DNA from: Epithemia pelagica
Taxonomy: Eukaryota; Protista; Bacillariophyta
Reading direction: 5' to 3'
Length of the DNA stretch: 64,000 nucleotides
Assembly: GCA_946965045.2 (NCBI GenBank)
Contig: OX337236.1
Coordinates: forward strand, 3,162,001 to 3,226,000
In this document: positions 11,812 through 56,238 of the stretch, piece after piece
Position numbering within the stretch: the first letter of the stretch is position 1
Layout: every line of letters starts with the position of its first letter
Translations under genes and position numbers: made by a program
The notes under the pieces: model-generated
Told to the model about the DNA's origin: nothing
What the model saw: only the letters and a program-made list of their open reading frames with translations
Databases searched by the model: none

Positions 11812-12272
11812 GGTTTTGACTGCAGAATTTATGAGGATCAAGAGAGACTAATGCAGAGACTGCAAATTACACTGCGTTTTTGCGGCTGCTGGAATTGCTG
11901 ATGGGTACGGACTGTGTCGCATTGGGTGAGCAGCGCCACGTTCCATCAGAGTAGTGTCTGTCCACGCTTTCCAGACAGTGTCATGGTCCCTTTTTGTCAT
12001 AGGAAACTGTATGTATTGTGAGTGGCTGTGACAACAACGCGTGGAAGTTTTAGAGCGAAAGTGTCTGTCGTGCGTACGGTCAAGCGCGGGGCTGCGACTC
12101 GCACATAAACTTCATGACAGCAACACCAGCCACTCCACGCATCATAAAAGTCGTTGTCGTCCAAGTTTTTCATAGAAGCAGTGTCAGAAGCGACGCAAAT
12201 ATACAGCAAACATGCACGTTCCACTGTTTCACTTTTTAAGCTTGTTTGCTTGCACGGTTGGGAAAAAATACC

Positions 12273-13223: not shown

Positions 13224-13563
13224 GTCTCGTACATGTCATGGATTCTGACTCGTCCCTGCATTCCCCGCTCTTGGCTATTTGTCGCATTGTCTGGGAAGAA
13301 GGCTTCCAAACCATGCTCAACTCTGGATATGTCGTCGTACGCTTTCTTCTCAATGTCGTAAGTCCAATACATGCCGAATGTCGAGCATGCCGATCCTGCT
13401 GTGAAGCAAAGAATGTGCAACATCATCCAAATGGGACCCGAAAACCTTTCGACCATCCATTTTCCAAGGAAACGCAGAGACACGACTATAGTGGAATCAA
13501 TTAGGAGTAAAACATTATTTGAATTGGCCTCATAGGGCGAAAAGCCTGTCGCACGTATATACG

Positions 13564-14123
13564 AATAGAATTGGAGAATGCAAGTCGTTTGTGGAACAAT
13601 CCACCTAGGTAGGCGTAGGAGTATAGGTGAAGGCACAATCTCCTGTTGCCCACGCAGACACATTGCCCACTCCCGAATGGATGATGGACACAGTCATCCA
13701 ATGTGTACTCCCGAGGAATCATTCGAGGAGGCCCCTACTACAATAGGTAGGAATAGTTTGTCCCGGTCGATGGACCACGCCATGTCTTTCCGGTCCCATT
13801 TCTTGTGTCGGAAAAAATGGTAGGTTCTGGAAGGAGACCGCCGAGACGGTTTCGTTCTACGAGAGAGAGAGAGAAAAAAGCGCACTTGACCAAAGTCTCT
13901 ACATACTACCTAGCTTGTCGGTCCTGGTCACCACTGCAACACAATTATTATTGTTGAGATTGCGTTTGGAATCCTTGTCTACCTACGTACTAGAGAACGA
14001 GAATCTCGAGAGCCACCCCAGAACTATATCGGAGAGTACCATAGCAATAGAAAATGTGTCGCTGCGATGGAAATTTCAAAAAGTAGTGCGGTCGACAGGC
14101 GACCCGGTCATGGAATGAGGTTT
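13564..14123. repeat. Segment X, inverted copy of about 57457-58021
   Basis: Colinear match from AATAGAATTGGAGAATGC to GGTCATGGAATGAGGTTT; the ORF track gives paralogous peptides MSVLVTTATQLLL at 13915 (+) and 57668 (-). Confidence 0.85.
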
Positions 14124-14593
14124 GCCGTAACGGTCCATTGCGCAATCACTGTGGGTCACGTAGTAGTAATCTGTAGTAGTATTGGTTGAAGTGTAGAGCA
14201 TTCCACCCTCGTTTGTCGCGCAAGCACTGCCCAGCAGCACCGGGTCATTGTCTCATCCACACCCTTTCCAAAATGCAAACAAAAACCAAGGAGAAAAGTC
14301 CTCGAGAGGAACACAACAACAACCACCACCAGGAAACCGCTTCCGAGGCACAGGAATAAAGAATTCATTGTCCTTCGTTCTTGTGAACTCTGAGGTTGGT
14401 GATGCCACTTCGGAACATTGGTGGGTCTTTTAGGCAAGGCTATCTGGCTCGTGCCAACGGAAAGAGTGGTAATGAAGCTTCGGGACATTGCTGGGAGTTC
14501 TGGCCCGCACATTGGCCCAATCCATTTATTGGAGGATAGCATTCCAATAAACTTCCTCAGTCGCACACTCCTATCATGTGCATTGCAGATTCA

Positions 14594-17500
14594 TCATATC
14601 ATGTCTCGTTTTCTGTTCCACTCTTCTGGAGCGTATCCTAGCAGTAGAGCAGCTTGTCGATTTTCCGCTTCCAAATCTTCCCATGCATGAGTTGACATGG
14701 CCGGTGGATCAAAGTCCATGTTCCATATCTTGGGATTGAATTCGAGCTTTTGTGCCGCACGTTGCGCTGTAACCAAGAAGTACAAGTGGTGAGAGTGGAA
14801 ATACTACAGAGCTTGTTGTCCCCATGGCGTAGCTTCCTATCCGTAAGTGATGCGTACCATAATGGGGAAGTGCATTCCAATCCAACTCCCCATAGCGAAC
14901 TTCCATGGTAGCCTCAACACCATGTTCCAATCGACCAGCCTTTGTCTGTTGTGCCTTGTTGTGGTGGTGTGTAGTATGGTCTTTCCATGTGACTCCCTCT
15001 TCTTCCAGTTTGCTCTTGTTTTGAATCTTCCACGCAACTTTTTCCCAATTCGATCGCAGGAGGAAATACAAATTGGGCGCCCCCGAACACGTGTAGCCAA
15101 TCACGACCGAACTCGCCAATCCCTGCAGATCATAGCCACACAAAATGGTTGCCCCGGCCGATAGGGGAAGCGTGACGCCCCAACTCCCGATAAAGCCCAT
15201 GGCAGTGGCCAAACCAAATCGATCTTGTGCTCCCAATAAGCTCCACGTCATGGAACCAAACACCATGGCAACATTCCCCATGCACATGTACGGGACCAAT
15301 TCGGCAAGCATGCCCTGCAGTGTCTCTTCGTGCGTGAACCATCCAGGCAGTTGTCCATGAAAGGCAATAACGGGCAGAACGACCAGGACTGCTACGACAA
15401 CCGAAACAAAGAGGGATTTGTGCGCACAGTAACGTGCCCGTTTGGTTTGTCCCGATCCTAGTAAGTAGGCAACCCGCACTTCGGCCGCATCGGCCGAGGC
15501 CAATCCAATTTCCTCCATGGCCTCCCACAAATCGCCCAGCAAGCCCCAGACGGCCACTTCGGCGGGTCCCATGAATCCTGCAAACACAAACATGACCTCC
15601 CATTCCCCAAAGGCCATAAATTATCCCAAGGCTAGCGGAATGGCTTGTTTGAGAAACAAGCGTACCGCCCGACGATTGGCAATCGCAAAGCTTCCCACCA
15701 TGCCGCTCCAAAATCCATCCAACCAACCGTACCATAGTATCACAAAGACATTGGGAGTCAAAAAGACACATTCCAAAATCAAATGAATCATGCCGATATC
15801 TCGCAACGTGGTTATTTCGGGTCGAATCAGAACCACATACAGGACACATCCCAAACTGGTGGCACTGGAACAGAGTCCAAAGAGTGTTGCATAAATCTCG
15901 TGCCCCGTCACTTCCAACAGATAATACAACCCTTCATCAATGGGTCCCACAAACTCGTGGACAAACCCAATTTGAGCATAGGCAAAGGCACTATCGGCCA
16001 CCTCTTGGCCAAAGCCCAACCACACAATGACATCTTCCATATACCGGAGTCCAACAAAGGCAAAGGGGATGAGCAAGAGCTGGTAAAACAAGACGGCCAA
16101 TTGTACCATTTGTCCCGCCAAGTGATACTTTTTGGCACCGACTGCATGGCTGCACAGTGTGTACAGCGACGTGTTGGCACCCTCCATAATCATGGTAGAC
16201 AGAGTAAAGACGACTTGGACGGAATAATGCGCGCACAATTCCGTCGTGCCGAGCAAACGACCAATGACAGCCACTTCCATGAGTCCAAAGACATGTTCGA
16301 ACAATACCGTCATGGCAAAGGGCAAGGATGCTTGAATCAAACCCTTCATTTCGGAATCCCACGAGGCACATTTGGCAATCTTGTGACGGAACCGTTTCGA
16401 ACACAGGAATCGCCACCAGGGACGTTTGCCGCAACAGAGATCAATATTGACTGGCTGTTTTCGATGCGTGGTCCTGTCTTTCTTGTTGTGGTGTAGTTTA
16501 CTGGATGGGTCTGATGAGAGCAGTAGTTGCTTGGTAGGTGAATCCATAGGAGAGTTACCTGCCTCTCCACCAGGACTCGATAAGTTGGCTGGGATTCGCG
16601 ACAGGTGCTCAGCGTGCTTATAAAGATGAGGGATGAGTGTTCCTTTCGTGTCTTCCTCCTTTTCTTGCTCTGGTTGCTCTTGCTGTAGTGGTTGATGATG
16701 TGATTCCAGTTTGGATCCGCATTCTCGTGTCGTCGGCCATGGTCGGACCCGAATTTGATGTTGTTGTTCTCGGTGGTGGTGTCGTCGTGAGGAGTTGCAG
16801 ATCGACATAGCCACCCGTGGCAATAATTTCCGCTGCTGCTGCTGTGGTGGTTGCAGCAGCCAGGTCCAGTGTTTGTTCGGACAGCAACATGCCGTCCTGA
16901 TTGAAATCCACCTCGGTGTTGTTGTGGGTCCGGTGGCCCTCTGGTGATGGTAGTGGTGATGGCGATGGTAGATGGAGGGGTCCATTGGGTATCACCAAGG
17001 ACGTTACAGGACGTTGACGGATACTACGACGATGGCGGCGACTGGACGGCGAATGAGACGACAGCGAGGAGGACGAAAAGGATGAGGACAAACCACCACC
17101 CGGAGATTGCGACGAGACTTCATCGTCCCAGGCAAAGGCCGATTCATCGTACGCCAAGTAAATGGTACCATCTTCCTCCGTACTATTCGTCTGGTTCTTG
17201 TCGTCGTTCTTGTCGTGGCTGTCCGTGGGAGAGTCGGCGGCAAAGATGGGAAGTTCCAAATGGTGACACGTCCATGGCGTCTCGAGTGGTTGAGAACTTA
17301 TTGTGGTGGTTGGCTTGGTATTGTGATTGTTGGTGGGGGATGGAGGAGGAGCAAAGGATCGTACCACTTGCGCCGCTCGTTGGACTCGATTTTGTCGATT
17401 GCGTTTGGGTTTCCATCGCAACCACCACAAAAAGGGACGTGTCGTGGTGCTTGTGCTGGAACTTGTTGGAGAAGGATCCGAAAATGGTTCCAGCCACCAG

Positions 17501-42109: not shown

Positions 42110-42817
42110 TCAGTGCTCAGTGCTCATGGTCGTCTTTTGTGGAGTTGCTCAAAAAGTGAGACGATTCTTGGCCCATGTGCCAGCAATACAAAGCGTGACC
42201 GGCGCGTCGATTTCGAACGATCGAAGGGAGGCTGGCGATATCACCCGGCTGGCGCTTTGGGAAAAAATACGAGACAATTTTTTCCATTCGGATGACGGAC
42301 GAACAAGGTACCCCAATCGCACCCTATAGGTTACTGAGTGTCTAGCGAATTATCTAATATGTATTTATCCGAATCACACCAGGAATCGCGAACCACACCC
42401 TGAACCACACCCTGGGACCAGGGCTGTGAAGTACCAAAGTCCGATTTTTTACAAAGTATCATACTTCGTACTATACTTTGCGTACTTTACAAATTCCCTT
42501 AGTCTAATCCCTTTCTTTTTTCTAACGGACTTACAGTCCCCTAGTCCAATCCCCCCTCGTCTCCCAACCAGACTTCACCATCACCAGTCCCTCCCCCACC
42601 TTCTCCAGACCAGACTTTAAGTCTGTCACTCTGTCAGTATCATTTTTCTCTTCGTACTATCAGTCTCCCAGTCAAGTACACCCCCAACATATTATGGACT
42701 TACAAGTACAAAGTCACTCCTCATCCTTGCAAAAAAGTACGACCAACAATTCTTCCAGTCACTGCCTGTCCTGATTTTCCAAACAAGCACATAATAACAG
42801 ATGAGGATGATAGATGC

Positions 42818-45800
42818 ATGTACCATGTACCTCTGCGGCAGTGTTTTTCATATCCAAGATGCTTCAACAATCCAACTGTTTTACTTGTTCACACCACAGC
42901 AGCACATCCGAGATCAACAACAACAACGACAATGGAAGACGGAGTAGAAGATACGAACGAATCTCAAGAAGATATTGACCACCAGCCGTCTCCTTCTACA
43001 GAATCAAGAGATTCAAACATGAAGAAACGGCTTTCCACGAACAAGTCTCAACCTAACAACAACAACAACTCCCATTCCGACAACACCAACAAACCTTCAT
43101 CTTCAACGAAAAGTTGCTCTGTCAAGAAGAAGGCTGCCCCTACCAAGAATCCTTCTGCTCCTTCCGGAACCACCCCTACAGAATTACAACAAAAACCCTC
43201 TGCTCTAGAAGCTCATTTGAAACTCTTGGAAGAAGAAATTGCACCGGCCGTTGAAGTGAAGGAGAATTACTTTGCTGTTGAAAAGGCCATCGTCCCAACT
43301 CTTGATTTGCCCAACATGTTATTTTTTGGTGACCCCAACTGTTCAATGTACTGGCACTGGGTCGTTCACATCGACTGGCCAGTATGGGAGAGAAAGCTGG
43401 CCACTGAATTTGAAGACATCCCCAAAACCCTCGGCATCTGCAAGATCATTAAAAACATGGCAACGTATACGAATGTTGGAGACATGACTGCACTTGATTC
43501 TGCTCACACTCCCAGAGCAAAGGACAAGGCAATGCGAGACAAATACGCAAATTTGAGCCGATACATAGTCATCTATGCTGTTTGTTTTGCTGCCAAGGAC
43601 AAGTCATTGGATGAAGCTGTTCTTCTTTGTGGGCAGCAGAAGATGTCAAACATCAAGCAACACAAAGACAAATGGCATAAGGACTCTCCTTTAGAAGACC
43701 CAAATTCTCGACAATCATCGAGTCAAACAACACTGGCATCATACCGTATTCAAAACACATCCAAATCGCAAGCAACAGGCGACTTGCAGAAACTTATATA
43801 CAGGTTTGTGAACGACTGTAACTTACCTGCCATCACTGTTGAAAAGAAGCCCTCCTTCAGTGACCTCCTTCGGTATGCAATCAACAACGCCTCTGCTCTC
43901 AAAGACACACCGGCCGAAGTCATAAGCAGACGGCAGATTACCAAACTACGCATCCATTCCTACCAAGTATTCTTTGGATTGATAAGCGATCTTGTGAATC
44001 ATTGCCGAAATGAATTCGTACGGCTATGTTACCGGAAAGTTCCCTTCATTACGGTTTGTCATGATATTTGGCAGGCTAAAAAGTATGACGTGCTGGGTGT
44101 CACAATCATGTTCACGGACCCAAGGAACTGTGTTGTATATCGGATCCCAATTGGTCCTGCGGAATGTCAAGGCCATGGTGCTACAGACGTTGCTAACTTG
44201 ACCGACTCACTTCTCATTGGCGTTGGCATTACCAGAGATGATCTCTGTGCGTCTGTGAATGATAACACCACTGCCGCAGTCCTAGCCGGTAAATATATCA
44301 TCGGTCACCCGAGAAAGGCCCGCAAATGCGACATGCACAAAACAGAATTGGTGCTCAAACATGCGACTTGACTCGTGGAACGATACCACAATCGCCAGCT
44401 CATGGACTCAAACAAAACCTTCCTAGAGCTTTGGCAGGAGTTCAAACAATTTGCATCTTGGCTAACTAGTAGTCGTGCGCCACAGCGATTTCAAGACTTC
44501 CGTGGTTCATGTCTCAGAATGGGATTGAAAGTCATTTCAATTCCACTCCCCAACGATACAAGGGTTCAAGGTCTTATAATGACGATACAAGCCCTTATGC
44601 GATGCAAGTGGGCGATGGACCATTATGTTGCGTTAACAATCAAGAGCGATGCAAAATTCAAGAAACGATACCCAGAGGAAGACAAATGGGAACTGTTGGC
44701 CCAATATGAGGGCATACTGACTCCGCTGAAACAAGTTGCTTTTAGCCTACAGTCTGACGAACCAGGTGCAAGCTCGGCAGCACTATTGGAGATCTATTGT
44801 TCATACTTCACTGCCACAACAATGTGCTACAAACTCAGCGACAAGTATGGTGGTGTTGCTTGTCTGACAATCAAGAAAGGTAGCGAAAGACAATGGGATG
44901 CCCGTACGGCCATTGACGATTTGGACGAGTTCCGTGATACGATCAAATTCGACGATTTGAAACCTGGACCACGTCTTTTGATTCGACGCATACTAGCTGA
45001 ATATAAGCATTATCTGATGGATCACGACGAGGACAGCATAAAAGCAGTTTGTTGCAATCCACTGCTCGCGAATGTCTTTGAAAACATGTTTGTCCAATTT
45101 GGAGTCTTCGATCAAGACAACGTGAGGACGTGTCGTCAAATTATCATCAAGGACATGGTGGCCAAGTTTAGTAATAAGCATATGTCCCGGATTGGAGCCG
45201 CCCTCGCCAAACAGAATACCAATGAAAGAAATGAGTTGGACAGTGCCGAAGAAGATAATACTCTACCAAAGACAGTAAAATGAAAAACAAGGGATATTTT
45301 TGCCAGCATGCGACGATCTCATGACATCCAACAACAAGCACTGTTACATCTAAGTGGAAAGGCCTCAGCTGCGGCAACGGAACAAGAACTTGTGCAAGCA
45401 CTCCGAAAGAAATGTACCGCATGCTACGACGAGTTTCGGACCTACTGTGAAAACAACATCGATAACCATTGGGCGGCCATCACGGAGGACTATGGGACAG
45501 AACAATATTCAATAGACCGTGAGAAATGGGATGATTACGAACAAGCCAAATTTGAATACAACTGTCGGAATCGAAACTATCTAGAGGTGGGCAGATATTT
45601 CGATCTCATGGCATGGTGGCGTGACTTTTCTGTGCAGTTCCGCTTTCTTTATCCAAGTGCAATGATCTGGCTAGCCAAGCCAGCAACTAACGCATTCCAG
45701 GAACGTGTTTTCTCTATTGGAGCATGGATGCATCAAAATAAGCTAATGGGTAGCCTTTCCAAGAAAGCCAACGAAATGTGCACGATGGACTACATCAATC

Positions 45801-47089
45801 GCGACAAGTTGGTGGAGATTTTGAATAACGAGAACGACGTGAGGAACTGTGTTGGTACAAGTTTGTCTTATGTTCCAGAAACAGGGCCATCTCCTCGGAA
45901 AAATGAACAGGCAACCACTCAACGACAGTCGCTGAAACTCACAGCAATCCAAGAAGTGAAGAAGGGATTTAAGTCATACACTGATTCCTCTCGCAGTACG
46001 AAGAATGTTCTGAAGGATCCCAACATTGTCATGACATTCATCCATACATCAGCAGAGGAGGGGCCGATCCAACCCGACGCTGAAGTGTCTCAAGAGGGTG
46101 ACAGTAAACAAGATGAAGCGTTCAGGACAAAGGAAGATGAAAAACGCGAAGATGGCAATCACAATGATGTACAGGACAGTGAGCTGGGAAAAAAGGACGA
46201 CGATAGGGTTGAGCAGGGAAGCAAGGCTGAACAGGGAAGTAAGGTCAACGTCTACAATATGAATAAGAAGGCCAACAAAGACAAGAGTCCTCCAGTGATG
46301 AAGGTGGCGAACCGAGTAAAGTTTGTGAAAGTTCCTAAACGATTCAACGATGATTCTGACGATGAGTCAATCGATTTTTCGTCGTCTGACGAAGATAGTG
46401 ACAACGCAATCGACAATCTCATCGACGAAAATTTACCCAGCTATGGACCTACGAAAGATGAAAGGCAAGTAGTCGACCGGCAAGGGGAAGAAAGAGAAAT
46501 GGGACCAGGACAGGAAATGGGAACAGAGCAGGAAATGGGAACAGGACAGGCGGCGGAAAACCAATCGCAAAAAAGAAAGAAAACATCATCGTCCTTTGCC
46601 ACAAGGGGGGAAAAGGCGCCAAAGAAGAAAATATCGAAACAAGCATCGAAACAAACAACAATGAGTGCAACATCCCTTACGACCCTGTCCAACAAAACAA
46701 AAAAGAAAACCAAGCGCCAACAAACAACGATGCAACCAAAAAGAGTGTCTCCGAGAAAGAAAAAAGGCGAATCATCCGCCACCGCAACCGCTGTTGCGAG
46801 CATTGCAATAGGTTTATCTGGGAAGCAAAACCGAACAACACCTCCATCTGCTAGATTGGTGCGCAAGAAGCAGCGCAAGGAAGAATTGGAGAAAGAGTTG
46901 GAGGCTTTTTACGATAACGACGTATCCCAGGACGACCCTCAGGTCAGTGACCAGATTAACCAAGAAATGAAGGGTGTGGTGAACGAGTCAGAGGACGAGG
47001 AAGAAGAAGAAGAGGAGGAGCAAGAACAAGACATTGAAGAGAATGATGAGGGGCTAGATGAGGATGAAGAAGATGAGAACGAGTTTTAG
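42818..47089 (+). pseudogene. hAT transposase, one 1424-codon frame interrupted by two in-frame TGA codons (44369-44371, 45281-45283)
   Basis: BED-like C..C...SNIKQH...H; CHDIW (D), NDNTTAA (D), CDMH (CxxH); dimerisation domain WW...LYPSAMIWLAKPATNAFQERVFS (E). The three ORF-track pieces share one frame. Confidence 0.9.
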
Positions 47090-47173
47090 TGATAAGAGAA
47101 GTAGTTTGAATAAGAAGATTAGCAGCAAGAAGAAATTAAGTAATATAATTCAATGATACGTGTTAATCATTCT

Positions 47174-47974
47174 TTACACCTTGTTGAACAATTCAGTATC
47201 AAATTTGTCGGTCTTAGACAAACGAGTGAGGAGGTTTGTTCGTTTGTGAATTGTTGCCGAGTGTTGTCCCAAGGCTCCAAATAGTGGGTTAATGTAGGAC
47301 CATTTGTCTTTCGGAACCCATGACTGTAAGTGCTTCGACGTTGCCAATCCATTCAAATTTGGTGGTACCCATCCAAAGGCGGCAGACCAACGAATAACGT
47401 GAATATCGGCCGGGATTCCGTCGACTCTACCAAATGCGGACTCCAGTATGATACAAGCGGTCTTGTATCCGATTCCGTTCAGTGTTATTAATTCGTGGAT
47501 TGTTATCTCTTTCGGAATGGTTCCATTGTGCTTTTGTATAAAGTAGTCTGCGGCATTAACGATCCGCTCTGTATTCTGGTAGTAGCGACCAGACTCGGAA
47601 AGAAGACAATACAGAGCGTCCATTCCATATTTCTCAGCAATTTCCAAAACAGCGGCAGCCGAAGTCATACCACATGCAAATAGGCGAGGCATTATGGTGC
47701 TTAGCTGTACGTCTGACGTACTCGAGCTCATGCAGATTGTCATCAAAACCATAAAGGGCCTGTCGGCAAGAGGTTCAGCGGCGTGGTTGTCAATCCATGC
47801 CTCCCATTTGTCTCGAGGGGCCATGAATCCGTAGAACTTCAGTTCCTCATGAAAATTTGTCATTTGGGATAGTTCATGTAAATGACGATCCAAGATAGTG
47901 CAAGGGATGGATGGTGTGTCGAAGTTCAAATCAGAACGACGAACCTGTTTGAGTTTAGGAGCGGTACCAGGCAT
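47174..47974 (-). CDS. Endonuclease III/Nth-like HhH-GPD DNA glycosylase/AP lyase carried inside the hAT
   Basis: PFMVLMTICMSSSTSDV, HNGTIP, HhH LITLNGIGYKTACIILESAFG (catalytic Lys), IPADIHVIRW (catalytic Asp) and LQSWVPKDKWSYINPLFGALGQ match the Nth pattern; no 4-Cys FeS motif. Confidence 0.88.
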   Translation of the reverse strand: MPGTAPKLKQVRRSDLNFDTPSIPCTILDRHLHELSQMTNFHEELKFYGFMAPRDKWEAWIDNHAAEPLADRPFMVLMTICMSSSTSDVQLSTIMPRLFACGMTSAAAVLEIAEKYGMDALYCLLSESGRYYQNTERIVNAADYFIQKHNGTIPKEITIHELITLNGIGYKTACIILESAFGRVDGIPADIHVIRWSAAFGWVPPNLNGLATSKHLQSWVPKDKWSYINPLFGALGQHSATIHKRTNLLTRLSKTDKFDTELFNKV

Positions 47975-48960
47975 ATGACGGTCGGTATTATCATCATCGA
48001 AATAATGATTTTTTTTTTGGATCGGGACGTGGATTGCAGAAACATTGCTTTTATGTTGTTCCTGGATCTTGTCGAGTAATTGTGCGTAGGTGTTGTTGGT
48101 TTTTTTTTGGAAGCAGGAGCCTTTGTTGATTTGTCATTGGAGGAAGACGGAGTTGTTGGGGTGGGCTTGGTAGGTACAGGAATAGGAAGTTTTTCGATGG
48201 AAACTTGATCATGTGATAAGGCATGGTTTGTTTGTGATGGTAGCTCCAAAAGGGGGGAAATGTCCGAGAACATACACTCCAACTCTTTGAAATAGGGAGT
48301 TGTGCAATATGGAATGCACATACTTCCATTAGATTCTTCTTCCGCGCACGGGCATAAAATGAAACCATTGACAAAATACTGTGGAGATTGTGTACAACGT
48401 ATTCCAATAGAATTCTCCAACATCCAGGAAATGATGACGGCTTGTACCGAGACGGTAGGACAACTTCCTCTGATCCTTTTGGTGTTCAACATGCATTCAT
48501 GAAACACAGGGGACCGGTTTATCGTTAGCTTGGGTGTGCATTGTGTAATAAGTAGAAGATTGATGGCATGATCTGGTTCGAATGGTTCAAATTCATGTGC
48601 CGAATGATTGGGAACTTGTGGAGATGGTCCGACAAAAAAAGTTACGACAACGGATGCAATAATCTCAAGCATGTCTGGGTATCGTAATTCATATAATTGG
48701 CATGGGTGATTTGCCAATTCACCAGTGTTCTCTTCTTCGTGGAAAATGACAGCATTGTTCTGTATCAGCCATGCAATGGTTGCACGTTTCACGGATTGGA
48801 CCAGTTGTCTCCTGAGGAGGTCTTGGTGTGTTTGTTGTTTGATGTGGTTGTGCATGGCGTCGTTATAAGAGAGGTTTGATCGTAGAATGAACTTGAGGTT
48901 ACAGGTAGAATGGAAATGAATGAACGTGGGTGTAATAGGTTCGTCCATTTCTTCAGCCAT
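47926..48960 (-). CDS. Unknown hAT cargo ORF, probably the N-terminal half of the glycosylase fusion
   Basis: 344-codon ORF overlapping the glycosylase frame; a one-base shift in the T10 run (48009-48018) fuses the two frames without stops. Confidence 0.6.
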   Translation of the reverse strand: MAEEMDEPITPTFIHFHSTCNLKFILRSNLSYNDAMHNHIKQQTHQDLLRRQLVQSVKRATIAWLIQNNAVIFHEEENTGELANHPCQLYELRYPDMLEIIASVVVTFFVGPSPQVPNHSAHEFEPFEPDHAINLLLITQCTPKLTINRSPVFHECMLNTKRIRGSCPTVSVQAVIISWMLENSIGIRCTQSPQYFVNGFILCPCAEEESNGSMCIPYCTTPYFKELECMFSDISPLLELPSQTNHALSHDQVSIEKLPIPVPTKPTPTTPSSSNDKSTKAPASKKKPTTPTHNYSTRSRNNIKAMFLQSTSRSKKKIIISMMIIPTVICLVPLLNSNRFVVLI

Positions 48961-49477
48961 GGTTCGGTTGTAGGGGCATGGTGAAGGGGGTGATGAGATG
49001 ATTTGTTTGCTGCTGGGTGTGTAATGTGAAGTGTTGCTGCAGTGTGCAGTGACTCGGGCGGATGACCGCAGGAAGCATGTTCAGAACTACAAAAAGTATA
49101 CTTGGACTTCGTACTATAAAGTAGGTACTTTACTCAAAAAGTACCGAAGTATATGGGTAGTTTGTGGAAGGATTATAGTCCTTAAAGTGTAGTCCCTCCA
49201 TCTTATTGAGTGGACTATAGTACATACCCTAAGTACTTGTCGTCTTCTAGAAGGGACTTAAGTCTGACGCTGTAGTCCTATTAGTAGGCACTAGCAGACT
49301 ATAGTCTTTTAGATAAAGCGATTGTTGTGTCTGTAATGTACTATAGTTGTTAAGTATAGTCTTATGGGTATCAAGAGGGGATTGTGTATTCTCTAGTCTA
49401 GTCTACTAAAGTATTTCAGCAAACTTATAGTCCTGTAGTCTAGTCTCATGTGAAATGTGCGATACTTCACAGCCCTG

Positions 49478-50788
49478 GGACACCCGCTATATTTGTAACC
49501 ACGACCCCATTGGGCTTATTTCTGGTTGGCTGAGATGACTGTACCTCATTTTTCTACACTACCGAAAAAGACATAGGCACGTGTCAAAAAATTACTTAAA
49601 TCTAGCAATTTTTGAAGTCAGAGAAGCCATGCGCGGAGATTCGCCAAATGTATCGGATGCTGTATCGATGCACATACAACTGTATCCAGTCGTGTATCGG
49701 GGTTGTATCTAGTTGTACCGGGGGGCTTAGGTACTGTATCGATACAACGGATTTGTATCGGTTTTTGTATCGGGGGACTCGAGTCCTCTGTATCGGGTCT
49801 TCCGAACTTGTTGCGATTTGTATCGGGCTAATGTATCGAGCTCCCCGGTGCGAAATTTCACTGCGCTCCTACATACGAGCTCCACCGCACTGAAATTGCA
49901 CAAGCAGTAGCCCGTGCTTTTTTGGTCCCCACTGTTTTTTCTATAGTGATTCTAGTTTCGTAAGAAAACCACTACGGTCGTTTTGCACAGCATAACACCA
50001 CCATGGACGATAAAGACCGCTGCGCACCTCCAACGAAAGGTCCTAGTACTCCTCTGAACACCCAGGAGGCTTGATCTTCATGTGTACCGTGAAGGGTGAA
50101 AAGGGCGGCGTTAAGATATCTGTTTTCATGGACCTACGGCAAGATCTAGAAGACCTTCCATTTTTGGGTTGGAAGGAAACAACAAGAGGATCAAGATTGG
50201 AGTCCGATAATGGTGGAATGAACGAAGATTGCAGGGATGGACGACAAGTGGTGACAACGACAACAACAATCAACTACTCGCTGCCGCCGAACGAAACACT
50301 CGGCGACAAGGACAACACTCGGACAACAACAACCCCAATGCAACAATCAACGATCGAACATGCGTTTTGCGATGACGGTTTGTGCAGACTCATTTTTGTT
50401 GTAGTATCGGGGGTATTTTGTATCGGGGGTGTGTATCGGGGTTTCGTCGATTTGTATCGGCTGTATCGACCCCCTTGTATCGTTTGTATCGGGGTTGTAT
50501 CGGGTTGTATCGGGTTGTATCGTTTGTATCGGAATTTGTATCGTTTGTATCGGATGTTGTTTCGAACAGTTGTATCGTTTGTATCGGGTTGTATCGACCC
50601 TCGCCAAATGTGCCGATTCATGTATTTTCCTCTCTATGTATTCTAATTTACAGAAATATCAATATCGATAAGTATTTTGTTCTATTATAGTGTACCAAAA
50701 AGAAAATGAACTTGTCCGTCCTTCGCTCCTTTCGGTATATTCTGTTCAAGGTCCATTAGAGCTATGGTTACAAATATACCGGGTGTCC
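49478..50788. mobile_element. Harbinger-type MITE, 1311 bp, inserted in the terminal CTG of the hAT
   Basis: 24-bp TIR GGACACCCG(C/G)TATATTTGTAACCA (23/24 match); TSD CTG (49475-49477, 50789-50791); TGTATCG arrays at about 49650-49840 and 50400-50612. Confidence 0.9.
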
Positions 50789-51039
50789 CTGCCTGGGACA
50801 CCCGGCATTTTGGTTCCCCCAGAATGACTTTACCTAAACTCCTATTGGGTAGCTAGGGCTGATCGCTAATTTTGCTAGGGCTAGCTATATTATTTTATGC
50901 ACAATAGGGTTCGGGTCAAAGACACATGTTCAAGACCAAACAAATTATTGTTAATTATTAGTTTTCTTATGTCGCATATGAGTCTTGTATTATGATGATC
51001 GCTAAATCTTTCCATTTTGAGTCGTGTTGGTTTCGGGTT

Positions 51040-51213
51040 GGTCCCGATTTTAACGTCTGGTTTCGACTTGGTGTCCAGTGGTTTCGACTTGGTGTCCAGT
51101 GGTTTCGACTTGGTGTCCAGTGGTTTCGAGTTGGTTTTGACGTTGGTTTCGACGTTGGTTTCGACGTTGGTTTCGACGTTGGTTTCGAGTTGGTTTCGAG
51201 TTGGTTTCGACTT
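51040..51213 (+). repeat. Subterminal array of 11-bp GGTTTCGA(C/G)TT-type units, left
   Basis: Direct reading; a same-strand twin lies at 55405-55578. Confidence 0.9.
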
Positions 51214-51419
51214 CTCGCGAACGCAATAATCAACCATCTCTTGCAACATCGCTTCTGGCGACGAAAGGAGTTGTAAAAGCGAGCGAGAGGGTGCTCACTT
51301 TGTCTTGGCGACAAGAGGAGTGGTAAAAAAGCGAGTGAGAGCGTGATTTGTTCGGCAGGAGTTCAGACTCAAAAAACTACAGGAGGAAAGAAGTGACAAG
51401 ACGAAGTGGCAAGACGAAC

Positions 51420-51887
51420 ATGACCGAGAACAACAAGAAATCCTCCAACCTACCGCCCATCAACGAGAGGAAAGGGGCGAGAATCAAGATTGTGGTGGGG
51501 ACCTACAAGGGGCTACGAGCATGGGTTGACACGGCAAAGGAGTGCACCCGCTACTACACCCCTGTAATCATCCAAGTCAAGTCGAATCCGACGGTGTTGA
51601 AGGCGACGAGAATTCAACACACAAGTTTTGTGATGGAGGCCCAGGTTCAGACACCATCGAACAAAGAAGAGGCCATGATCTTCGAAAATGCTGATATGTT
51701 GGAGATGTTTACTGTGCTGACGAGGAAAATGGCAGAGTTTGAGGAAATCTCTGCATCAGGAGAAGGTGGAAAGCGCATCGCAACACTATTTCTTAAATTT
51801 CTGAACACAGCAATTTCCGAACAGAATGCCTTACCCAACGAAAAGGCCCGCTGGCGCCGAATCAAATTCAATGGTGGAAGCCGTTAG
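51420..51887 (+). CDS. Harbinger accessory ORF A (155 aa), KOW-like N-terminus
   Basis: Intact ORF from MTENN; KGARIKIVVGTYKGLRAWV resembles a KOW motif; lies inside the TIRs. Confidence 0.6.
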   Translation: MTENNKKSSNLPPINERKGARIKIVVGTYKGLRAWVDTAKECTRYYTPVIIQVKSNPTVLKATRIQHTSFVMEAQVQTPSNKEEAMIFENADMLEMFTVLTRKMAEFEEISASGEGGKRIATLFLKFLNTAISEQNALPNEKARWRRIKFNGGSR

Positions 51888-51968
51888 TATAGAGCCACAA
51901 TAACCACTAGTGCATTTCAGACAAAGAATTCGCTTTTACTATTATGTAGTCAATTACTAGATGTGTGC

Positions 51969-53437
51969 CTATTCGGAGAACATGTTCCTGGCCTCAGCCT
52001 CCTGAGTCTTTTGAGACTGCTTACCACCAATCTTTTGGCCACCAGAGATGGCAATGCGCCAATAAAGGGTCATGGCCAAGATATCTTTCCCAAACAGATT
52101 GACAGGGTGATCCTTCTTGAGCTTGAGGGGATTCTTGATCATTGGCACCACGTTGTCATCCTTCGAGAAAATCTTGTTGTCCAAGACAACGCCCGGGGAA
52201 AAAACAAAGAGCCAGAGCGCGACCTGGCGCCATTTTTCCTTCAAATCGTCAATCGCGACTTCAGTCGCACTGTGAGCCTTTAAAGTCGCGTCGCAATTCA
52301 CCTTCGAGTCCCTACCAATTCCTTCGTGGTAACGCTCAGTGTCGCGAACAAAAAATCCTGAGCGGGACCCTTGAACCGAATCAACCGTCCGTGCCACATC
52401 TCCTCATAGTCTCTGTCAGGGATTGTCGCCTCCCAAGCGTTCATATCCGGGCATGCGACATGCCTGCGAACATGGAATCCGTTGCGAGTGAAGAAGCCTT
52501 CGTGATTTATGCCCTGGACAAACTGCACGTCAAAGTCGCGGTGGCGCTCAGCATACTTGGAAATCGGCACAATCCAAGGATGTTGCACCGTGCCATTCTG
52601 TTTCACAAACCACGAAATCGGAATGAAGGGATGGCTAGGAGAAGAATTGGCGGCAGCGGACACCAAAGGTGACAGTTGGCCAAAGCGATGCTGCTGTTGG
52701 CCCGGGACGAAAGAACGGGCCATAGGGGGACGGGGAGGTGTATGGAACATCGCGGAAGCTTCGTGGTTGTTGTTCTGGTGACGGATGGCTGGCGGTGGAT
52801 GAGCCCTGGCTGCAGGTTTTGTGTCTTCATCTTCATCCAACAATCCAACTTGCTGGAAGTTATCTGAAAGCGAGGCCACGTCATCCTATGGAGGAGGAGG
52901 ATTGATGCCGTTGCTGTCAAACAGCATGGCATACGGGTCCTCGTGTTCTTCAACGATGATCTCTTCGCTGGTGGTGTGGGAGTTGGAGGCGGTGGACGAG
53001 TTGTCCGAGGGAGGGGCTTTGTTCTGCTTCATGTTCTTTGATGCTGCTGCAAACTCTGCAAACTCTGCCAAGCTGACTTTGCATGGTATCACGCCAAGCT
53101 TGTTCAGGTATGAGATGTGAGCCTTGATGCTCCGATTCTTGCACTTGGCCCAACGCTGTTGGACCTGTCGCCGAAGCGTCGATCCTTCGGCTCCGAAAAC
53201 TGACGGGTTTGAGTCGCATAGACTCCAAAGGTCGAAGGTGTCTCGAGTATTCCCCGAATGCTCAAATGAATCAAGAAGCCGTTTTGTGACGTCTTCGTTC
53301 AATCCACCGACAGCAGCTCGCTTCTTTCTCTTGGGATGCTCAGGGGCGGCAACAGGGGGATCGTCCTCAGCGTGAAACTGGTGATCCCAATCTTTCTCTT
53401 CCTGGATGGATGCTTGTTCTTGTTGTGAGCCTTCCAT
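51969..53437 (-). pseudogene. Harbinger accessory ORF B (about 490 codons) with an in-frame TAG (52886-52888) and a frameshift in a T6 run near 52350
   Basis: ORFs 52886-53437 and 52298-52879 are in frame across the TAG; one added T joins them to 51969-52397; globular segments such as LWSLCDSNPSVFGAEGSTLRRQVQQRW. Confidence 0.7.
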
Positions 53438-53837
53438 GTTGTTGGTTTTTTGGAGAGATGCTGCTACGGTCGAAAGAGAAACCGGACTGGCGCCAATCTA
53501 CTTCTACCAAGTTGGCCATCGTCACCATTGCACATGGTGGTTCACGGCCCATCACATTCATTAATGGATAACAATATTCTAGAGTTTGATTGACGCATTC
53601 ATATGTATTAGGATGTCTACTTAGATGCTGTCTTCCTTGTTTCTACTAACGAGTTGAGAACTCGTGAATTTGCTGGCGCGTGTTGGTCAATCTACCCACG
53701 GGTCCTCATCATCATTATCATGTGTCTTCAAGGGCTACGAGTGTGACACATTGGACTAGTGAGTGACCTTCCTGAATGCCGATGGAGTTCTGCTCCAACT
53801 TCAATCCATGCGTCACATTTTGCAACAATCAAAAAGA

Positions 53838-54758
53838 ATGACTCTTCAGCCGTCGGAAGTTCTTGAAAGGGGCCTACGGCTTCTGGATGTGGACAATGAT
53901 GGTACATTGGCATTGGAACGACGACGACTGAAGTTCAGAAAGCACTACGGGTCTCACCCGTTGGTGATTACTGCACAATGGTTTGACCTATGCCACGCAA
54001 CAGACGACAATGGAGAGCAACTACTTTCTACGAATGAGAAGAAGAGAGGGTTTAAGATGTTCATGGTTGCGCATTACTTTCTCTACAACTACACGAGAAA
54101 TAGTGAGCAACTTGCTGATCGCTTTCAAATGTGTGAGAGCTATGCTCGAGGTGAGCATCTGTGGGTGTGGATTCGAAAAATTGCGTTTCTCGAGAAAAAG
54201 GTAATTTTCTGGCCGAGAATTCTGGACAGCCCCACCTCGGAGGTCAATGCATTGTCCGTTGACGGTGTGGACAAAAAGACTTTTGAGCGCAAGCACAAGA
54301 CGCAGCTGCTTCCGTTTGATTGCGGGAATTGTTCGCACAAGCATGCTCACGGTGCTCTCAAATATCAGATTGTAATGGCCGCGCACCGACCGCGGTGTGT
54401 TCATATATATGGCCCTGTGCGTGGTGGAATGGGGGACAAGGAGATGCTTGAACGGTCTGGCGTCTTGGCACGACTCAAGCCGGGCAAATTGATCGTGGCT
54501 GATCGCGGTTACATCAAGAAGGAGTTCGGTGGGAAAATTTCCTGGCCCAATCCCCAAGAAGATTCCAAAGAAGCGAATAATCTCAAGAGCCGGATCCGTC
54601 TTCGGCATGAAAGTTTCAACGGGAAAATGGCTGCGTTTAGATGCCTCAAGCAAACGTGGAGGCACTCAGACGACAAACACGGCATTGCGTTTCGTGCAGT
54701 GGCTGTGACAGTCCAGTATGCACTCGATAATGGCACAAGTCTCCTATTTGAGCCATAG
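53838..54758 (+). CDS. PIF/Harbinger-type DDE transposase (DDE_Tnp_4-like), intact
   Basis: LSVDGVD (D), HKH...LKYQI, IVADRGY (D), RIRLRHESFNGKM (E); between matching TIRs. Confidence 0.9.
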   Translation: MTLQPSEVLERGLRLLDVDNDGTLALERRRLKFRKHYGSHPLVITAQWFDLCHATDDNGEQLLSTNEKKRGFKMFMVAHYFLYNYTRNSEQLADRFQMCESYARGEHLWVWIRKIAFLEKKVIFWPRILDSPTSEVNALSVDGVDKKTFERKHKTQLLPFDCGNCSHKHAHGALKYQIVMAAHRPRCVHIYGPVRGGMGDKEMLERSGVLARLKPGKLIVADRGYIKKEFGGKISWPNPQEDSKEANNLKSRIRLRHESFNGKMAAFRCLKQTWRHSDDKHGIAFRAVAVTVQYALDNGTSLLFEP

Positions 54759-54812
54759 ATTCATCCATAAATTCATTCTAGTTGAGAATTGGTTTTCTAC
54801 TATGTTTTATTT

Positions 54813-55404
54813 CTATGCTAGGATGCGTTTTGCGAGTTCTCGGCGTCGCATCAACTCGTCTATTGGAGAGATCGGAGGCAGATTGGCTTTCTGTTTGGCT
54901 TCCTCTTCCTTGAGCCGCAAGTAGTTGAAGAAGCGAACTCGTCTCACTTCTTGATAGATTCGAAACTTGAAGATTTCTGGCTTGAATTCCATGTAGGCAG
55001 GACGAGTCTTCCTCAGTGCCATGGGCTTCAAACTTGAGGTGGACGCCATTGGCCACGTCCATTCGGAGAAGGTACTTTGCTGGATGGATGTCAAAGACCA
55101 GCTCTCCACGGCAGTTTCGGTCCTTCCTCGGATGGACGCGACGGTCGACTTGTTGTGCCTTGTGGTCTCGTTCCATTAAGGCCTTCGCGTCGTTTGATTG
55201 TTTTCGGTGGTCCTTGAGCCTTTCCTTGAATTGATCGAACAGGACGTCTGCAAATTCTGGGAGTTTCTTGTAAAACTCAAAGAGGTGCGCAGCCGGAACA
55301 ACGTCCATGTTGTGAAGGAGACCACCCGGCTCGAGGTCTCTCACAAGAATGGCCCGTGCCGCACTAACACGCCAATCAACCCATCCGGAGCGTCGTGGTG
55401 GCAT
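54813..55404 (-). pseudogene. Harbinger accessory ORF C (about 196 aa, two internal helical repeats) with a +1 frameshift at 55030-55032; candidate DNA-binding partner
   Basis: W..S.A..IL..DL...F..F..RL is repeated as F..HPAK.LL..D...RP.Y..F....F..RIYQE; removing one T joins ORFs 54778-55479 and 54813-55109. Confidence 0.65.
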
Positions 55405-55578
55405 GGTTTCGGGTTGGTTTCGGGTTGGTTTCGGGTTGGTTTCGAGTTGGTTTCGAGTTGGTTTCGAGTTGGTGTCCACTTGTTTCCACTTGTTTCGAGT
55501 TGGTGTCCAGTGGTTTCGACTTGGTTTCGACGTGGTTTCGACTTGGTTTCGACGTGGTTTCGACTTGGTTTCGACGTT
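55405..55578 (+). repeat. Subterminal array of GGTTTCG(A/G)(C/G)TT units, right
   Basis: Direct reading; same orientation as the left array. Confidence 0.9.
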
Positions 55579-56238
55579 ACCTTAAAGCTACACGTGGCTC
55601 TGACATGGGGACTCGAAAACATTTCTTGTCTAAACCCTAATTTAACGTCAAAAATCAATTTTGATCTTATTTCAAGATCAAAACACTTAATTATCAATAA
55701 AGTCAACGGATATTGATGTTAAGTAGTGAACTTATTGTGTTGTAGGCGATCGCTAAATTCACACTGTACCAATTTAGAAGACTACCACGAAAGCGGAAAA
55801 GTCCAAGCTGCTACCAAAGTACCGGGTGTCCCTGAACCACACCTTTTTAGATCTCCCCGACGACAACGGCTCGGAACATATCACATGATGTGGGTGTGCG
55901 TGCATATGGAGTGGTTGGTGTTGCTGTCATGAAGTTTATGTGCGACTCGCTGCCCAACGTTTGACCGTACGCACGACTGACACTTTCGCTCAAAAGCTTC
56001 CACACGTAGTTGTCACAGCCACTCTCAATTCACAACCTCAGTTTCCTATGACAAAAAGGGACCATGACACTGTCTGGAAAGCGTGGACAGACACTACTCT
56101 GATGGAACGTGGCGCTGCTCACCCCATGCGACACAGTCCGTACCCATCAGCAATCCCAGCAGCCGCAAAAACGCATTGCAATATTTGCAATCTCTGCATT
56201 AGTCTCTCGCGATCCTCATAAATTCTTCAGTCAAAACC

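What the first reader, a model, noticed from the sequence alone, without database searches (positions are those of the whole stretch)
47174..48960. A hAT transposon carries an Endonuclease III-like (HhH-GPD) DNA glycosylase as cargo
Seen: between the perfect hAT TIRs, tail-to-tail with the transposase (84 bp apart), is an ORF with the full Nth signature set, including the HhH motif LNGIGYKTA and the D in IPADIH. Known: in E. coli Nth (LPGVGRKTA / VDTH) these Lys and Asp residues are catalytic for glycosylase/AP-lyase activity. The HhH-GPD superfamily also includes the 5mC glycosylases DEMETER/ROS1 and G:T-mismatch glycosylases (MBD4, MIG). Canonical hATs encode only a transposase, and model diatoms methylate TEs at CG. 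Here the C-terminal FeS Cys cluster is missing and the recognition-region residues (SSSTSD; SGRYYQNT in place of IGLYNSKA) are divergent, which hints at altered substrate specificity. Inference: a TE-borne base-excision enzyme that could act as an anti-silencing factor (removing 5mC or repairing its deamination products), nick or process DNA during transposition, or repair excision sites. I am not aware of this pairing being described, but have not searched.
Basis: partly seen in the sequence, partly recalled or inferred. Interest (0 to 1): 0.9.

Follow-up and report, generated by a model that had tools for sequence, protein, structure and literature searches.

The report
Decayed hAT transposon with glycosylase gene
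This is a worn-out copy of an old family of cut-and-paste (hAT) jumping genes that carry, beside their transposase, their own DNA base-removing enzyme derived from endonuclease III. I found no paper describing such a cargo, and it may let the element strip silencing marks from its own DNA.

Summary
A 7,059-bp hAT element (TIRs CAGGGCTGTGAAGTA at 42419 and 49477) carries an endonuclease III/NTH1-like gene, tail-to-tail with the transposase and 84 bp from it. The catalytic Lys and Asp are present and the Fe-S cysteines are absent.

Three corrections:
1. The 266-aa ORF is only the C-terminal half of a ~610-aa two-domain protein. The upstream 344-aa ORF is its N-terminal half, cut off by a frame break in an A10 run (48009-48018).
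2. This copy is decaying. The transposase frame has two in-frame TGA codons where sister elements have Gly and Arg.
3. It is not a one-off capture. Five sister elements (L002, L004, L005, L006, L008) have the same two-gene layout inside related TIRs. Four of them have perfect 8-bp TSDs, and L005 and L006 are 99.96% identical copies at different sites.

The glycosylase domain forms one clade, at most about 40% identical to other NTH proteins. It is more conserved than the transposase core (50-73% against 35-58% identity).

Its function is untested. My best guess, about 40%, is excision of 5mC or oxidised 5mC to counter silencing. I found no paper describing such cargo. This scan has already reported the family at least eight times on other DNA of the same genome.

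The parts
42419..42433 (+). Left terminal inverted repeat CAGGGCTGTGAAGTA
   Evidence: Perfect inverted match to 49463-49477. Sister elements start CAGGG[C/T]T.TGAAG.
42434..42817 (+). Left subterminal region with short repeats (AAGTAC and others); presumed transposase binding sites and transposase promoter
   Evidence: AAGTAC occurs 9 times in the two subterminal regions (both strands counted) and 0 times in the 6.1-kb interior. The role is inferred.
42818..47089 (+). hAT transposase: a single 1,424-codon frame interrupted by two in-frame TGA codons (44369-44371 and 45281-45283); a pseudogene in this copy
   Evidence: It aligns along its core with intact 1,193-1,363-aa sister transposases, which have Gly and Arg at the two stop positions. 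Pfam Dimer_Tnp_hAT scores 21.2 bits here and 26.7-32.7 bits in the sisters, above the 21.4 cut-off.
47090..47173 (.). 84-bp spacer between the two convergent stop codons
47174..48010 (-). C-terminal part of the cargo gene: basic RHxPGxxPKLK motif, a helical lead-in, and an NTH1-derived HhH-GPD glycosylase/AP-lyase domain (Lys171 codon 47464-47462, Asp190 codon 47407-47405); no Fe-S cysteines
   Evidence: The listed ORF is 47174-47974. Its frame stays open upstream to the A run. PDB NTHL1 hit at 3.9e-15. Lys and Asp are invariant in 25 family members.
48009..48018 (-). A10 run where the reading frame changes (-1) between the two halves of the cargo gene
   Evidence: The sisters read straight through here (SRSKTKIEY and similar). 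A10 is confirmed in contigs of three runs.
48010..48960 (-). N-terminal part of the cargo gene: a fast-evolving alpha/beta domain of unknown fold with two conserved Trp, followed by a disordered basic linker
   Evidence: The listed ORF is 47926-48960. BLASTP against residues 3-331 of P0010 gives E=6e-53. AlphaFold pLDDT is 77, with no significant structural match.
48961..49462 (-). Right subterminal region with short repeats (ACTATA, AAGTAC, AGACTA); presumed promoter of the cargo gene
   Evidence: The promoter role is inferred from position only.
49463..49477 (-). Right terminal inverted repeat
49478..49501 (+). Flank: the rest of the left TIR (GGACACCCGCTATATTTGTAACCA) of a neighbouring Harbinger-like element, into which the hAT inserted
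   Evidence: Removing 42419-49477 plus one GGAC restores that TIR. Its partner lies at 50765-50789.

Best explanation
Shown:
- The window holds a 7,059-bp hAT transposon inserted into the terminal repeat of a neighbouring Harbinger-like element.
- It belongs to an old two-gene hAT lineage. In that lineage a convergent second gene encodes a ~600-aa protein with three parts:
  - a fast-evolving N-terminal domain of unknown fold;
  - a disordered basic linker with a conserved RHxPGxPPKLK motif;
  - a C-terminal domain derived from eukaryotic-type endonuclease III (NTH1).
- The C-terminal domain keeps the Schiff-base Lys and the catalytic Asp. It has lost the [4Fe-4S] cluster.
- It has Ser and Arg at two positions that, in endonuclease III, insert into the DNA helix (Gln and Leu there).
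- The domain is inherited together with the transposase and is more strongly conserved than it.
- The copy in this window is decaying. It has two nonsense codons in the transposase and a 1-nt frame break in an A10 run that splits the cargo gene. Its ends are intact.

Inferred:
- In intact elements the protein is a bifunctional DNA glycosylase/AP-lyase.
- Its variable N-terminal domain directs it to the element's own DNA.
- There it excises 5-methylcytosine or an oxidised derivative, so that base-excision repair restores unmethylated C and the element escapes methylation-based silencing.
For: Layout:
- The same layout lies inside TIRs in L002, L004, L005, L006 and L008. L002, L004, L005 and L006 have perfect 8-bp TSDs.
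- L003 has the cargo gene with a convergent hAT transposase tail.
- L005 and L006 are 99.96% identical over 6,799 bp at different sites, so both genes moved together recently.

Co-divergence and selection:
- For every element pair, identity of the HhH-GPD domain (50-73%) exceeds that of the transposase core (35-58%), and both give the same grouping.
- Window against L004: pN is 0.16 for the HhH-GPD domain, 0.26 for the transposase core and 0.40 for the N-terminal domain. pS is saturated at 0.75-0.89.
- Lys and Asp are invariant in 25 members.

Origin:
- The TE proteins lie on one side of a branch in a 129-row tree (23 of 24 at SH-aLRT 99).
- Named relatives outside the family are eukaryotic NTH homologues at 33-39% identity.
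- The fold matches NTHL1/EndoIII.

Decay of this copy.

For the inferred function:
- Loss of DNMT5a in a diatom removes methylation and de-represses young TEs (PMC9998398).
- Fungal DNA transposons, hAT included, carry TET/JBP dioxygenases (PMC12730594).
- A plant transposon protein needs the host HhH-GPD glycosylases ROS1/DML2/DML3 for its anti-silencing effect (bioRxiv 10.64898/2026.08.24.746577).
- The N-terminal domain and the subterminal repeat motifs both differ between subfamilies.
Against: - No activity, substrate or expression data exist. No RNA run holding the gene was found.
- The closest solved relatives are oxidised-pyrimidine enzymes (NTHL1, EndoIII). The 5mC glycosylases DME/ROS1 did not appear among the PDB sequence hits.
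- CpG observed/expected in the elements (0.76-0.90) is no higher than in their flanks and is close to that of Copia elements. There is no sequence trace of protection from methylation-driven decay.
- The enriched subterminal repeat motifs contain no CpG.
- The N-terminal domain has no recognisable DNA-binding fold.
- I did not verify that the host is a diatom or that it methylates these elements.
- This copy itself cannot make either full-length protein without recoding.
Confidence: 0.45

Rival explanations
1. Self-repair enzyme. The glycosylase keeps the ancestral NTH1 job of removing oxidised or deaminated pyrimidines and cleaving AP sites. It benefits the element by slowing mutational decay of its copies or by cleaning up DNA around excision and insertion sites. 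It does not remove an epigenetic mark.
For: The best sequence and fold matches are NTHL1 and bacterial endonuclease III, which act on oxidised pyrimidines. The bifunctional Lys/Asp chemistry is retained.
Against: The host should already have general base-excision repair, so it is unclear why a transposon would pay to carry a generic copy for so long. Loss of the Fe-S cluster and the family-wide change of two helix-inserting residues point to a changed target. CpG observed/expected shows no protection from deamination.
Confidence: 0.2
2. Transposition accessory. The AP-lyase activity nicks DNA at or near the element. This could stimulate homology-directed repair of the empty donor site, giving a net copy gain, or it could prepare target DNA.
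For: The gene is inherited with the transposase in every lineage examined and is under stronger constraint than the transposase. The variable N-terminal domain could recognise element ends.
Against: hAT transposases studied so far work alone (my knowledge, not tested here). A glycosylase/lyase needs a damaged or modified base to start from. Nothing in the sequence links it to the ends.
Confidence: 0.1
3. In this copy the A10 run is a recoding site. Transcriptional slippage or a -1 ribosomal frameshift would give the full-length 610-aa protein, so the cargo gene is still functional here.
For: A run of ten A lies exactly at the frame change, and a -1 shift joins the halves in register with the sisters (SRSKKK|NHYF...RHMPG). 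A10 is present in contigs of three runs. An earlier first-reader note (s1-242531) raised the same alternative.
Against: All sister genes are single ORFs, and their equivalent sequence is interrupted rather than a long homopolymer (for example TCAAAAACAAAAATA in L004). The same element also has two nonsense codons in its transposase, so ordinary decay explains both. No RNA data were found.
Confidence: 0.07
4. Passive passenger. A host NTH1 fragment was captured once and is carried along without any use to the element.
For: The copy in this window is broken.
Against: The gene is found in at least six diverged elements with the same layout. It is at most about 40% identical to non-family NTH proteins. 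The catalytic residues are invariant. pN of 0.16 with saturated pS is lower than for the transposase.
Confidence: 0.03

Closest known systems
Endonuclease III / NTH1 (human NTHL1 7rds and 7rdt; Geobacillus EndoIII 1p59 and 1orn; E. coli Nth 2abk)
   Same: It has the HhH-GPD fold. The helix-hairpin-helix carries the nucleophile Lys (GxGxKTA) and the catalytic Asp lies 19 residues later. phmmer gives E=3.9e-15 and Foldseek gives 2.8e-7 with TM by target 0.69-0.76.
   Different: It has no [4Fe-4S] cysteine motif. Ser and Arg replace the residues aligned to E. coli Gln41 and Leu81. It is fused to a ~330-aa N-terminal extension. It is encoded inside a transposon. The Pfam HhH-GPD score is below the gathering cut-off.
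Fungal DNA transposons that carry TET/JBP dioxygenase genes, including hAT7 families of Puccinia (PMC12730594)
   Same: A cut-and-paste DNA transposon, hAT included, carries beside its transposase a gene for an enzyme that acts on DNA bases and is linked to removal of cytosine methylation.
   Different: The enzyme class differs: a base-excision glycosylase/lyase rather than an oxidising dioxygenase. The host group differs. In that paper, TET genes moved often between transposon superfamilies. Here the cargo co-diverges with one hAT lineage.
Plant 5mC DNA glycosylases DEMETER/ROS1 (HhH-GPD)
   Same: They share the superfamily and the bifunctional Lys/Asp chemistry. This is the proposed functional analogue. 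Host ROS1/DML2/DML3 are needed for one plant transposon's anti-silencing effect (bioRxiv 10.64898/2026.08.24.746577).
   Different: DME/ROS1 are host genes and (my knowledge) large proteins with an Fe-S cluster and extra conserved domains. They did not appear among the PDB sequence hits, even at E up to 10.
Sequence-specific anti-silencing proteins encoded by plant transposons (VANC of VANDAL/Mutator; reviewed in PMC6719617)
   Same: It is a second transposon gene whose product would act on the element's own copies to undo silencing. Part of it evolves fast between subfamilies.
   Different: As far as I know, VANC is not an enzyme acting on bases. There is no sequence relationship. The analogy is functional and hypothetical.

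Membership tests
hAT transposon superfamily | Short terminal inverted repeats starting CAG/YAG | tested here: met
   There are perfect 15-nt TIRs CAGGGCTGTGAAGTA. The sisters start CAGGGT/CAGAGT.
hAT transposon superfamily | 8-bp target site duplication | tested here: inconclusive
   In the window copy the flanks are CCTGGGAC and GGACACCC. Only GGAC is repeated directly. CCTGGGAC fits only if 4 nt of the right TIR are counted twice. The sisters L002, L004, L005 and L006 have perfect 8-bp TSDs.
hAT transposon superfamily | Transposase with the hAT C-terminal dimerisation region | tested here: met
   Pfam PF05699 scores 21.2 bits in the window copy, just under the 21.4 cut-off. It scores 26.7-32.7 bits in four sisters that align along the whole core.
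hAT transposon superfamily | Intact DDE/RNase-H catalytic core | not tested
   The catalytic residues were not mapped. There was no PDB sequence hit for the transposase. The window copy has two nonsense codons.
HhH-GPD superfamily, endonuclease III (Nth/NTH1) family | HhH-GPD fold and significant profile or sequence match | tested here: met
   PDB phmmer gives 3.9e-15 to NTHL1. Foldseek gives 2.8e-7 to 7rdt. Pfam PF00730 scores only 22.7 bits against a cut-off of 26.2.
HhH-GPD superfamily, endonuclease III (Nth/NTH1) family | Nucleophile Lys in the HhH motif and catalytic Asp (bifunctional glycosylase/lyase) | tested here: met
   Lys171 and Asp190 align to the Lys and Asp of NTHL1 and EndoIII. 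Both are invariant in 25 family members. Activity itself was not tested.
HhH-GPD superfamily, endonuclease III (Nth/NTH1) family | C-terminal Cys-X6-Cys-X2-Cys-X5-Cys [4Fe-4S] cluster | tested here: not met
   The window protein has no Cys after residue 174. There is no conserved Cys in the C-terminal region of the family alignment. It is therefore NTH1-derived but not a canonical Nth.
HhH-GPD superfamily, endonuclease III (Nth/NTH1) family | Helix-inserting Gln and Leu (E. coli Gln41 and Leu81; their roles are recalled from the 1p59/1orn work, not checked here) | tested here: not met
   The aligned positions are Ser (SSST) and Arg (GRYY/GRFY) throughout the family.
DEMETER/ROS1 5mC glycosylases | Closer sequence relationship to DME/ROS1 than to Nth; the DME-specific extra domains | tested here: not met
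   There was no DME/ROS1 chain among PDB hits at E up to 10. No Pfam domain other than HhH-GPD/HHH was found.
DEMETER/ROS1 5mC glycosylases | Excision of 5-methylcytosine | not testable with these tools
   This needs an enzyme assay.
Transposons with base-modifying cargo (the TET/JBP-carrying class) | Cargo gene lies inside the TIRs and is mobilised with the transposase | tested here: met
   L005 and L006 are 99.96% identical over 6,799 bp including both genes, with different 8-bp TSDs. The same layout occurs in L002, L004 and L008.

The most novel reading that the evidence does not exclude
The transposon-borne NTH1-derived glycosylase is the excision half of a demethylation pathway assembled from mobile elements. 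Earlier notes of this scan (untested by me) report other transposons of the same genome that carry TET/JBP-type dioxygenases. An enzyme descended from an oxidised-pyrimidine glycosylase would need little change to excise TET-oxidised 5-methylcytosine (5fC, 5caC or 5hmU). Together they would do what TET plus TDG do in mammals, but for the benefit of the transposons. The variable N-terminal domain would aim the enzyme at its own subfamily.
Probability: 0.15. Interest if true: 0.9.

Novelty: new variant of a known kind. Interest (0 to 1): 0.68.

Why it matters
Transposons are known to fight silencing with binding proteins (VANC) and, in fungi, with TET/JBP oxidases. In one plant case they borrow the host's HhH-GPD glycosylases. 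A transposon lineage that carries its own base-excision enzyme, and keeps it under tighter constraint than its transposase, would be a third and more direct route.

It would also be a natural Fe-S-free endonuclease III derivative with changed DNA-probing residues, so its substrate is worth knowing in its own right.

The question is directly testable, because intact sister genes (P0010, P0012) are in hand. The copy in this window adds little biology of its own. It mainly shows how such elements decay and that the cargo protein has two domains.

Tried and rejected
- **Metagenome scans.** Two scans, one with the glycosylase alignment and one with the transposase alignment, found no confirmed relative. 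I could not measure how often related hATs lack the cargo.
- **RNA evidence.** Neither run search returned an RNA run. All three runs listed are contig sets of one study, so expression and slippage at the A10 run could not be tested.
- **N-terminal domain.**
  - There is no Pfam hit.
  - Foldseek against PDB gave nothing below E=0.1.
  - AlphaFold DB clusters gave only weak DUF6824 matches (probability up to 0.75, TM at most 0.36).
  - VIA-align gave a best Z of 4.3.
  - The protein atlas gave only low-score SAND/TDBD/SKI leads (at most 0.59).
  - I treat the fold as unknown.
- **CpG observed/expected.** I tried this as a trace of methylation or of protection. The elements score 0.76-0.90, their flanks 0.73-0.95 and Copia elements 0.65-0.76. 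That is uninformative.
- **dN/dS.** Synonymous sites are saturated between all subfamilies for which I had DNA, so only pN and an upper bound can be given.
- **Host identity.** A search with a flanking adaptin gene returned no named organisms. 'Diatom' rests on earlier notes and is untested here.
- **One-off capture of host NTH1.** Rejected; see the rival explanations.
- **Assembly error at the A10 run or at the stops.** This is unlikely, because contigs of three runs agree base for base. They may, however, be the assembly's own data.
Full report
**1. What is at the coordinates**

The window holds one pair of perfect 15-nt inverted repeats, CAGGGCTGTGAAGTA, at 42419-42433 and 49463-49477. No other match occurs in 64 kb, even allowing two mismatches. 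Between them lie two convergent coding regions.

On the + strand, 42818-47089 is a single 1,424-codon frame. ORF listing splits it into three pieces, because it holds two in-frame TGA codons at 44369-44371 and 45281-45283.

On the - strand, the ORF 47174-47974 (266 aa) ends 84 bp from the transposase stop.

**2. Is it an endonuclease III relative?**

Pfam alone is borderline: HhH-GPD scores 22.7 bits against a gathering score of 26.2. Other evidence is clear.
- phmmer against PDB sequences gives human NTHL1 at 3.9e-15, Geobacillus EndoIII at 2.5e-12 and E. coli Nth at 4.2e-11. MutY and OGG1 appear only at E above 0.04, and no DME/ROS1 chain appears.
- An AlphaFold model of the intact sister protein P0010, built with a 25-sequence alignment (mean pLDDT 75.6, and mostly 86-96 per 10-residue block across the C-terminal domain), matches NTHL1 and EndoIII-DNA complexes. 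Foldseek E-values run from 2.8e-7 to 1e-4, with TM by target 0.66-0.76 for most of them.
- In the HMMER alignments, Lys171 and Asp190 fall on the nucleophile Lys and the catalytic Asp of NTHL1, Geobacillus EndoIII and E. coli Nth.
- The positions aligned to E. coli Gln41 and Leu81 are Ser and Arg. My memory of the 1p59/1orn work is that these two residues insert into the DNA helix. I did not check this.
- The C-terminal Cys4 motif is absent.

**3. The gene model needs correcting**

An exhaustive HMMER search of 1.84 billion representatives found 33 proteins at E below 1e-30. Most are 520-715 aa long, with the glycosylase part at the C-terminus.

The 344-aa ORF just upstream in the window (47926-48960, another frame) aligns with residues 3-331 of the 615-aa P0010 at E=6e-53. 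The two window ORFs are therefore the halves of one gene.

The frame changes in a run of ten A (48009-48018). Reading ...SRSKKK and then shifting by -1 gives NHYFDDDNTDRHMPGTAPKLK. This is in register with the family motif SRSK.xIxY...RHxPGxPPKLK.

Sister genes are uninterrupted here and lack the long homopolymer. An earlier first-reader note (s1-242531) had pointed to this A run. I confirm the join.

**4. This copy is decaying**

Aligned with intact sister transposases, the two TGA codons replace a conserved Gly (KHATGLV) and an Arg.

Logan contigs of three runs (one study, at most two samples) reproduce 44300-49500 with no difference and no gap. The stops and the A10 run are therefore in the reads. 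These runs may be the assembly's own source, so this is not independent support.

One 7,118-nt contig spans about 42385-49502 without branching. No near-identical second copy therefore exists in those data. The nearest relatives are a fragment at 78% identity (P0006, locus L001) and P0010 at 65%.

**5. Insertion site**

The 8 bp on either side (CCTGGGAC and GGACACCC) do not match. The right flank is the left TIR of a neighbouring element, GGACACCCGCTATATTTGTAACCA, whose partner lies at 50765-50789.

Removing the hAT plus one copy of GGAC restores that TIR exactly. An 8-bp duplication CCTGGGAC can be read if the last CCTG of the hAT TIR is counted twice. One of two tandem CCTG may have been lost.

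The insertion is therefore real and the TSD is atypical. The wider nest was noted by other first readers (s1-242280, s1-242442). I checked only this junction.

**6. It is a family, not a one-off**

Exact-protein look-ups placed relatives in genomic context.

| Locus | Source | Element span | TSD |
|---|---|---|---|
| L002 | ERZ21939226 | 8166-14980 | CTTAGGAG |
| L004 | ERZ21939226 | 9524-16342 | CTTAAAAG |
| L005 | ERZ21939226 | 9541-16338 | TTGTTCAC |
| L006 | ERZ21939226 | 9541-16338 | ATTCAGGC |
| L008 | sediment metagenome | 4-7220 | left flank too short to read |

- Each has the cargo gene tail-to-tail with a 1,193-1,363-aa hAT transposase, inside TIRs of the type CAGGG[T/C]T.TGAAG.
- L003, a 2.4-kb JGI contig, shows the same convergent pair.
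- L005 and L006 are 99.96% identical over 6,799 bp at unrelated sites, so the two genes moved as one unit recently.
- Several of these contigs probably belong to the window's own genome. A family member, P0158, sits on a contig of the same length (451,238 bp) as the window's contig.

**7. Selection and co-divergence**

| Compared region, across all element pairs | Identity |
|---|---|
| HhH-GPD domain | 50-73% |
| Transposase core | 35-58% |
| Basic/helical lead-in | 30-46% |
| N-terminal domain | 16-37% |

The glycosylase and the transposase give the same grouping: window with L004, then L005, with L008 and L002 apart.

Between the window and L004, the proportion of non-synonymous differences is 0.16 for the HhH-GPD domain, 0.26 for the transposase core and 0.40 for the N-terminal domain. 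Synonymous sites are saturated (pS 0.75-0.89), so dN/dS is well below 0.2 for the catalytic domain.

Forty columns are invariant in the 25-member alignment, and most of them lie in the C-terminal half, among them the Lys and the Asp.

In a 129-row tree of the domain, the 24 TE proteins lie on one side of a branch (23 of them at SH-aLRT 99). Their nearest neighbours are long-branch environmental sequences. Named relatives beyond those are eukaryotic NTH homologues (Citrus, Blastocladiella, Chromera, MMETSP protists) at 33-39% identity.

**8. The rest of the protein**

The N-terminal ~230 residues fold, in the model (pLDDT 77), into two similar beta-hairpin/helix/helix/strand units, each with a conserved Trp.

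No library gave a convincing match, so I call the fold unknown. It evolves fast.

The short repeats that mark the subterminal regions also differ by subfamily: AAGTAC/ACTATA here, TAGTCA in L004, GAATTA in L005, AAGTCA in L002 and AAGTTA in L008. They are nearly absent from the element interiors. This fits, but does not show, subfamily-specific DNA recognition.

**9. What it most likely does**

The chemistry predicted from the sequence is a bifunctional glycosylase/AP-lyase. I favour excision of 5mC or an oxidised 5mC from the element's own DNA as an anti-silencing device, at about 40%. My reasons are:
- Diatom DNMT5a loss de-represses young TEs (PMC9998398).
- Fungal DNA transposons, hAT included, carry TET/JBP genes (PMC12730594).
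- A plant transposon protein needs the host ROS1/DML glycosylases to demethylate its copies (bioRxiv 10.64898/2026.08.24.746577).
- The enzyme has changed its DNA-probing residues and lost its Fe-S cluster, while staying under strong constraint.

Against this reading:
- The nearest solved relatives repair oxidised pyrimidines.
- There are no expression or methylation data.
- CpG observed/expected gives no signal.
- I did not verify the host.

The rivals are listed with their tests: self-repair, a nicking accessory for transposition, recoding at the A10 run in this copy, and passive cargo.

**10. Novelty and context**

Four full-text searches found no paper describing a transposon-borne HhH-GPD or endonuclease III gene.

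The concept of transposons carrying enzymes that undo DNA methylation is known from fungi, so I class this as a new variant of a known kind.

This scan has already reported the same family at least eight times on other DNA of this genome. My results agree with those reports. What this window adds is a decayed, nested copy, the two-domain gene model and the comparison of constraint between the domains.

Noticed in passing
window 49478-50789 and 50795-55833: There are two elements with TIRs GGACACCCG.../...CGGGTGTCC, each flanked by CTG (a 3-bp TSD, PIF/Harbinger-like). The hAT sits inside the left TIR of the first. The host sequence AACCACACC recurs on both sides of the nest.
   Followed up: partly
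window 42434-42817 and 48961-49462; L002, L004, L005, L008 subterminal regions: The subterminal 6-mer repeats differ between hAT-glycosylase subfamilies (AAGTAC/ACTATA, TAGTCA, GAATTA, AAGTCA, AAGTTA). The enriched motifs contain no CpG, and they are nearly absent from the element interiors.
   Followed up: partly
L001 9983-10336 (+), 11964-11455 (-), 13581: There are two inverted fragments of glycosylase genes (77% and 47% identical to the window's) and a lone hAT TIR beside a Copia element. This looks like the wreck of related elements, with no transposase left.
   Followed up: no
L009-L012 (P0166, 334 aa): The nearest non-TE neighbour in the tree is an Nth-like protein found in several metagenome samples (four loci shown). 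It sits on contigs densely packed with small ORFs that have no Pfam hits. The context looks virus-like and is not a hAT.
   Followed up: no
P0059 (796 aa), P0177 (1,143 aa), P0185 (1,806 aa): JGI metagenomes hold very long proteins labelled 'endonuclease III' that match the query domain. They may be other fusions of this domain.
   Followed up: no
window 44369-44371 and 45281-45283: Both internal stops of the transposase are TGA. Sister elements have Gly (GGT/GGG) and Arg (CGC) there. The second could have arisen through CGA by a CpG transition, but this cannot be decided.
   Followed up: partly
window ~42385-49502 (Logan contig of 7,118 nt in runs X1 and X2): A short-read contig runs unbranched through the whole element and stops in the repeated flanks. 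This subfamily therefore seems to be single-copy in that organism.
   Followed up: no
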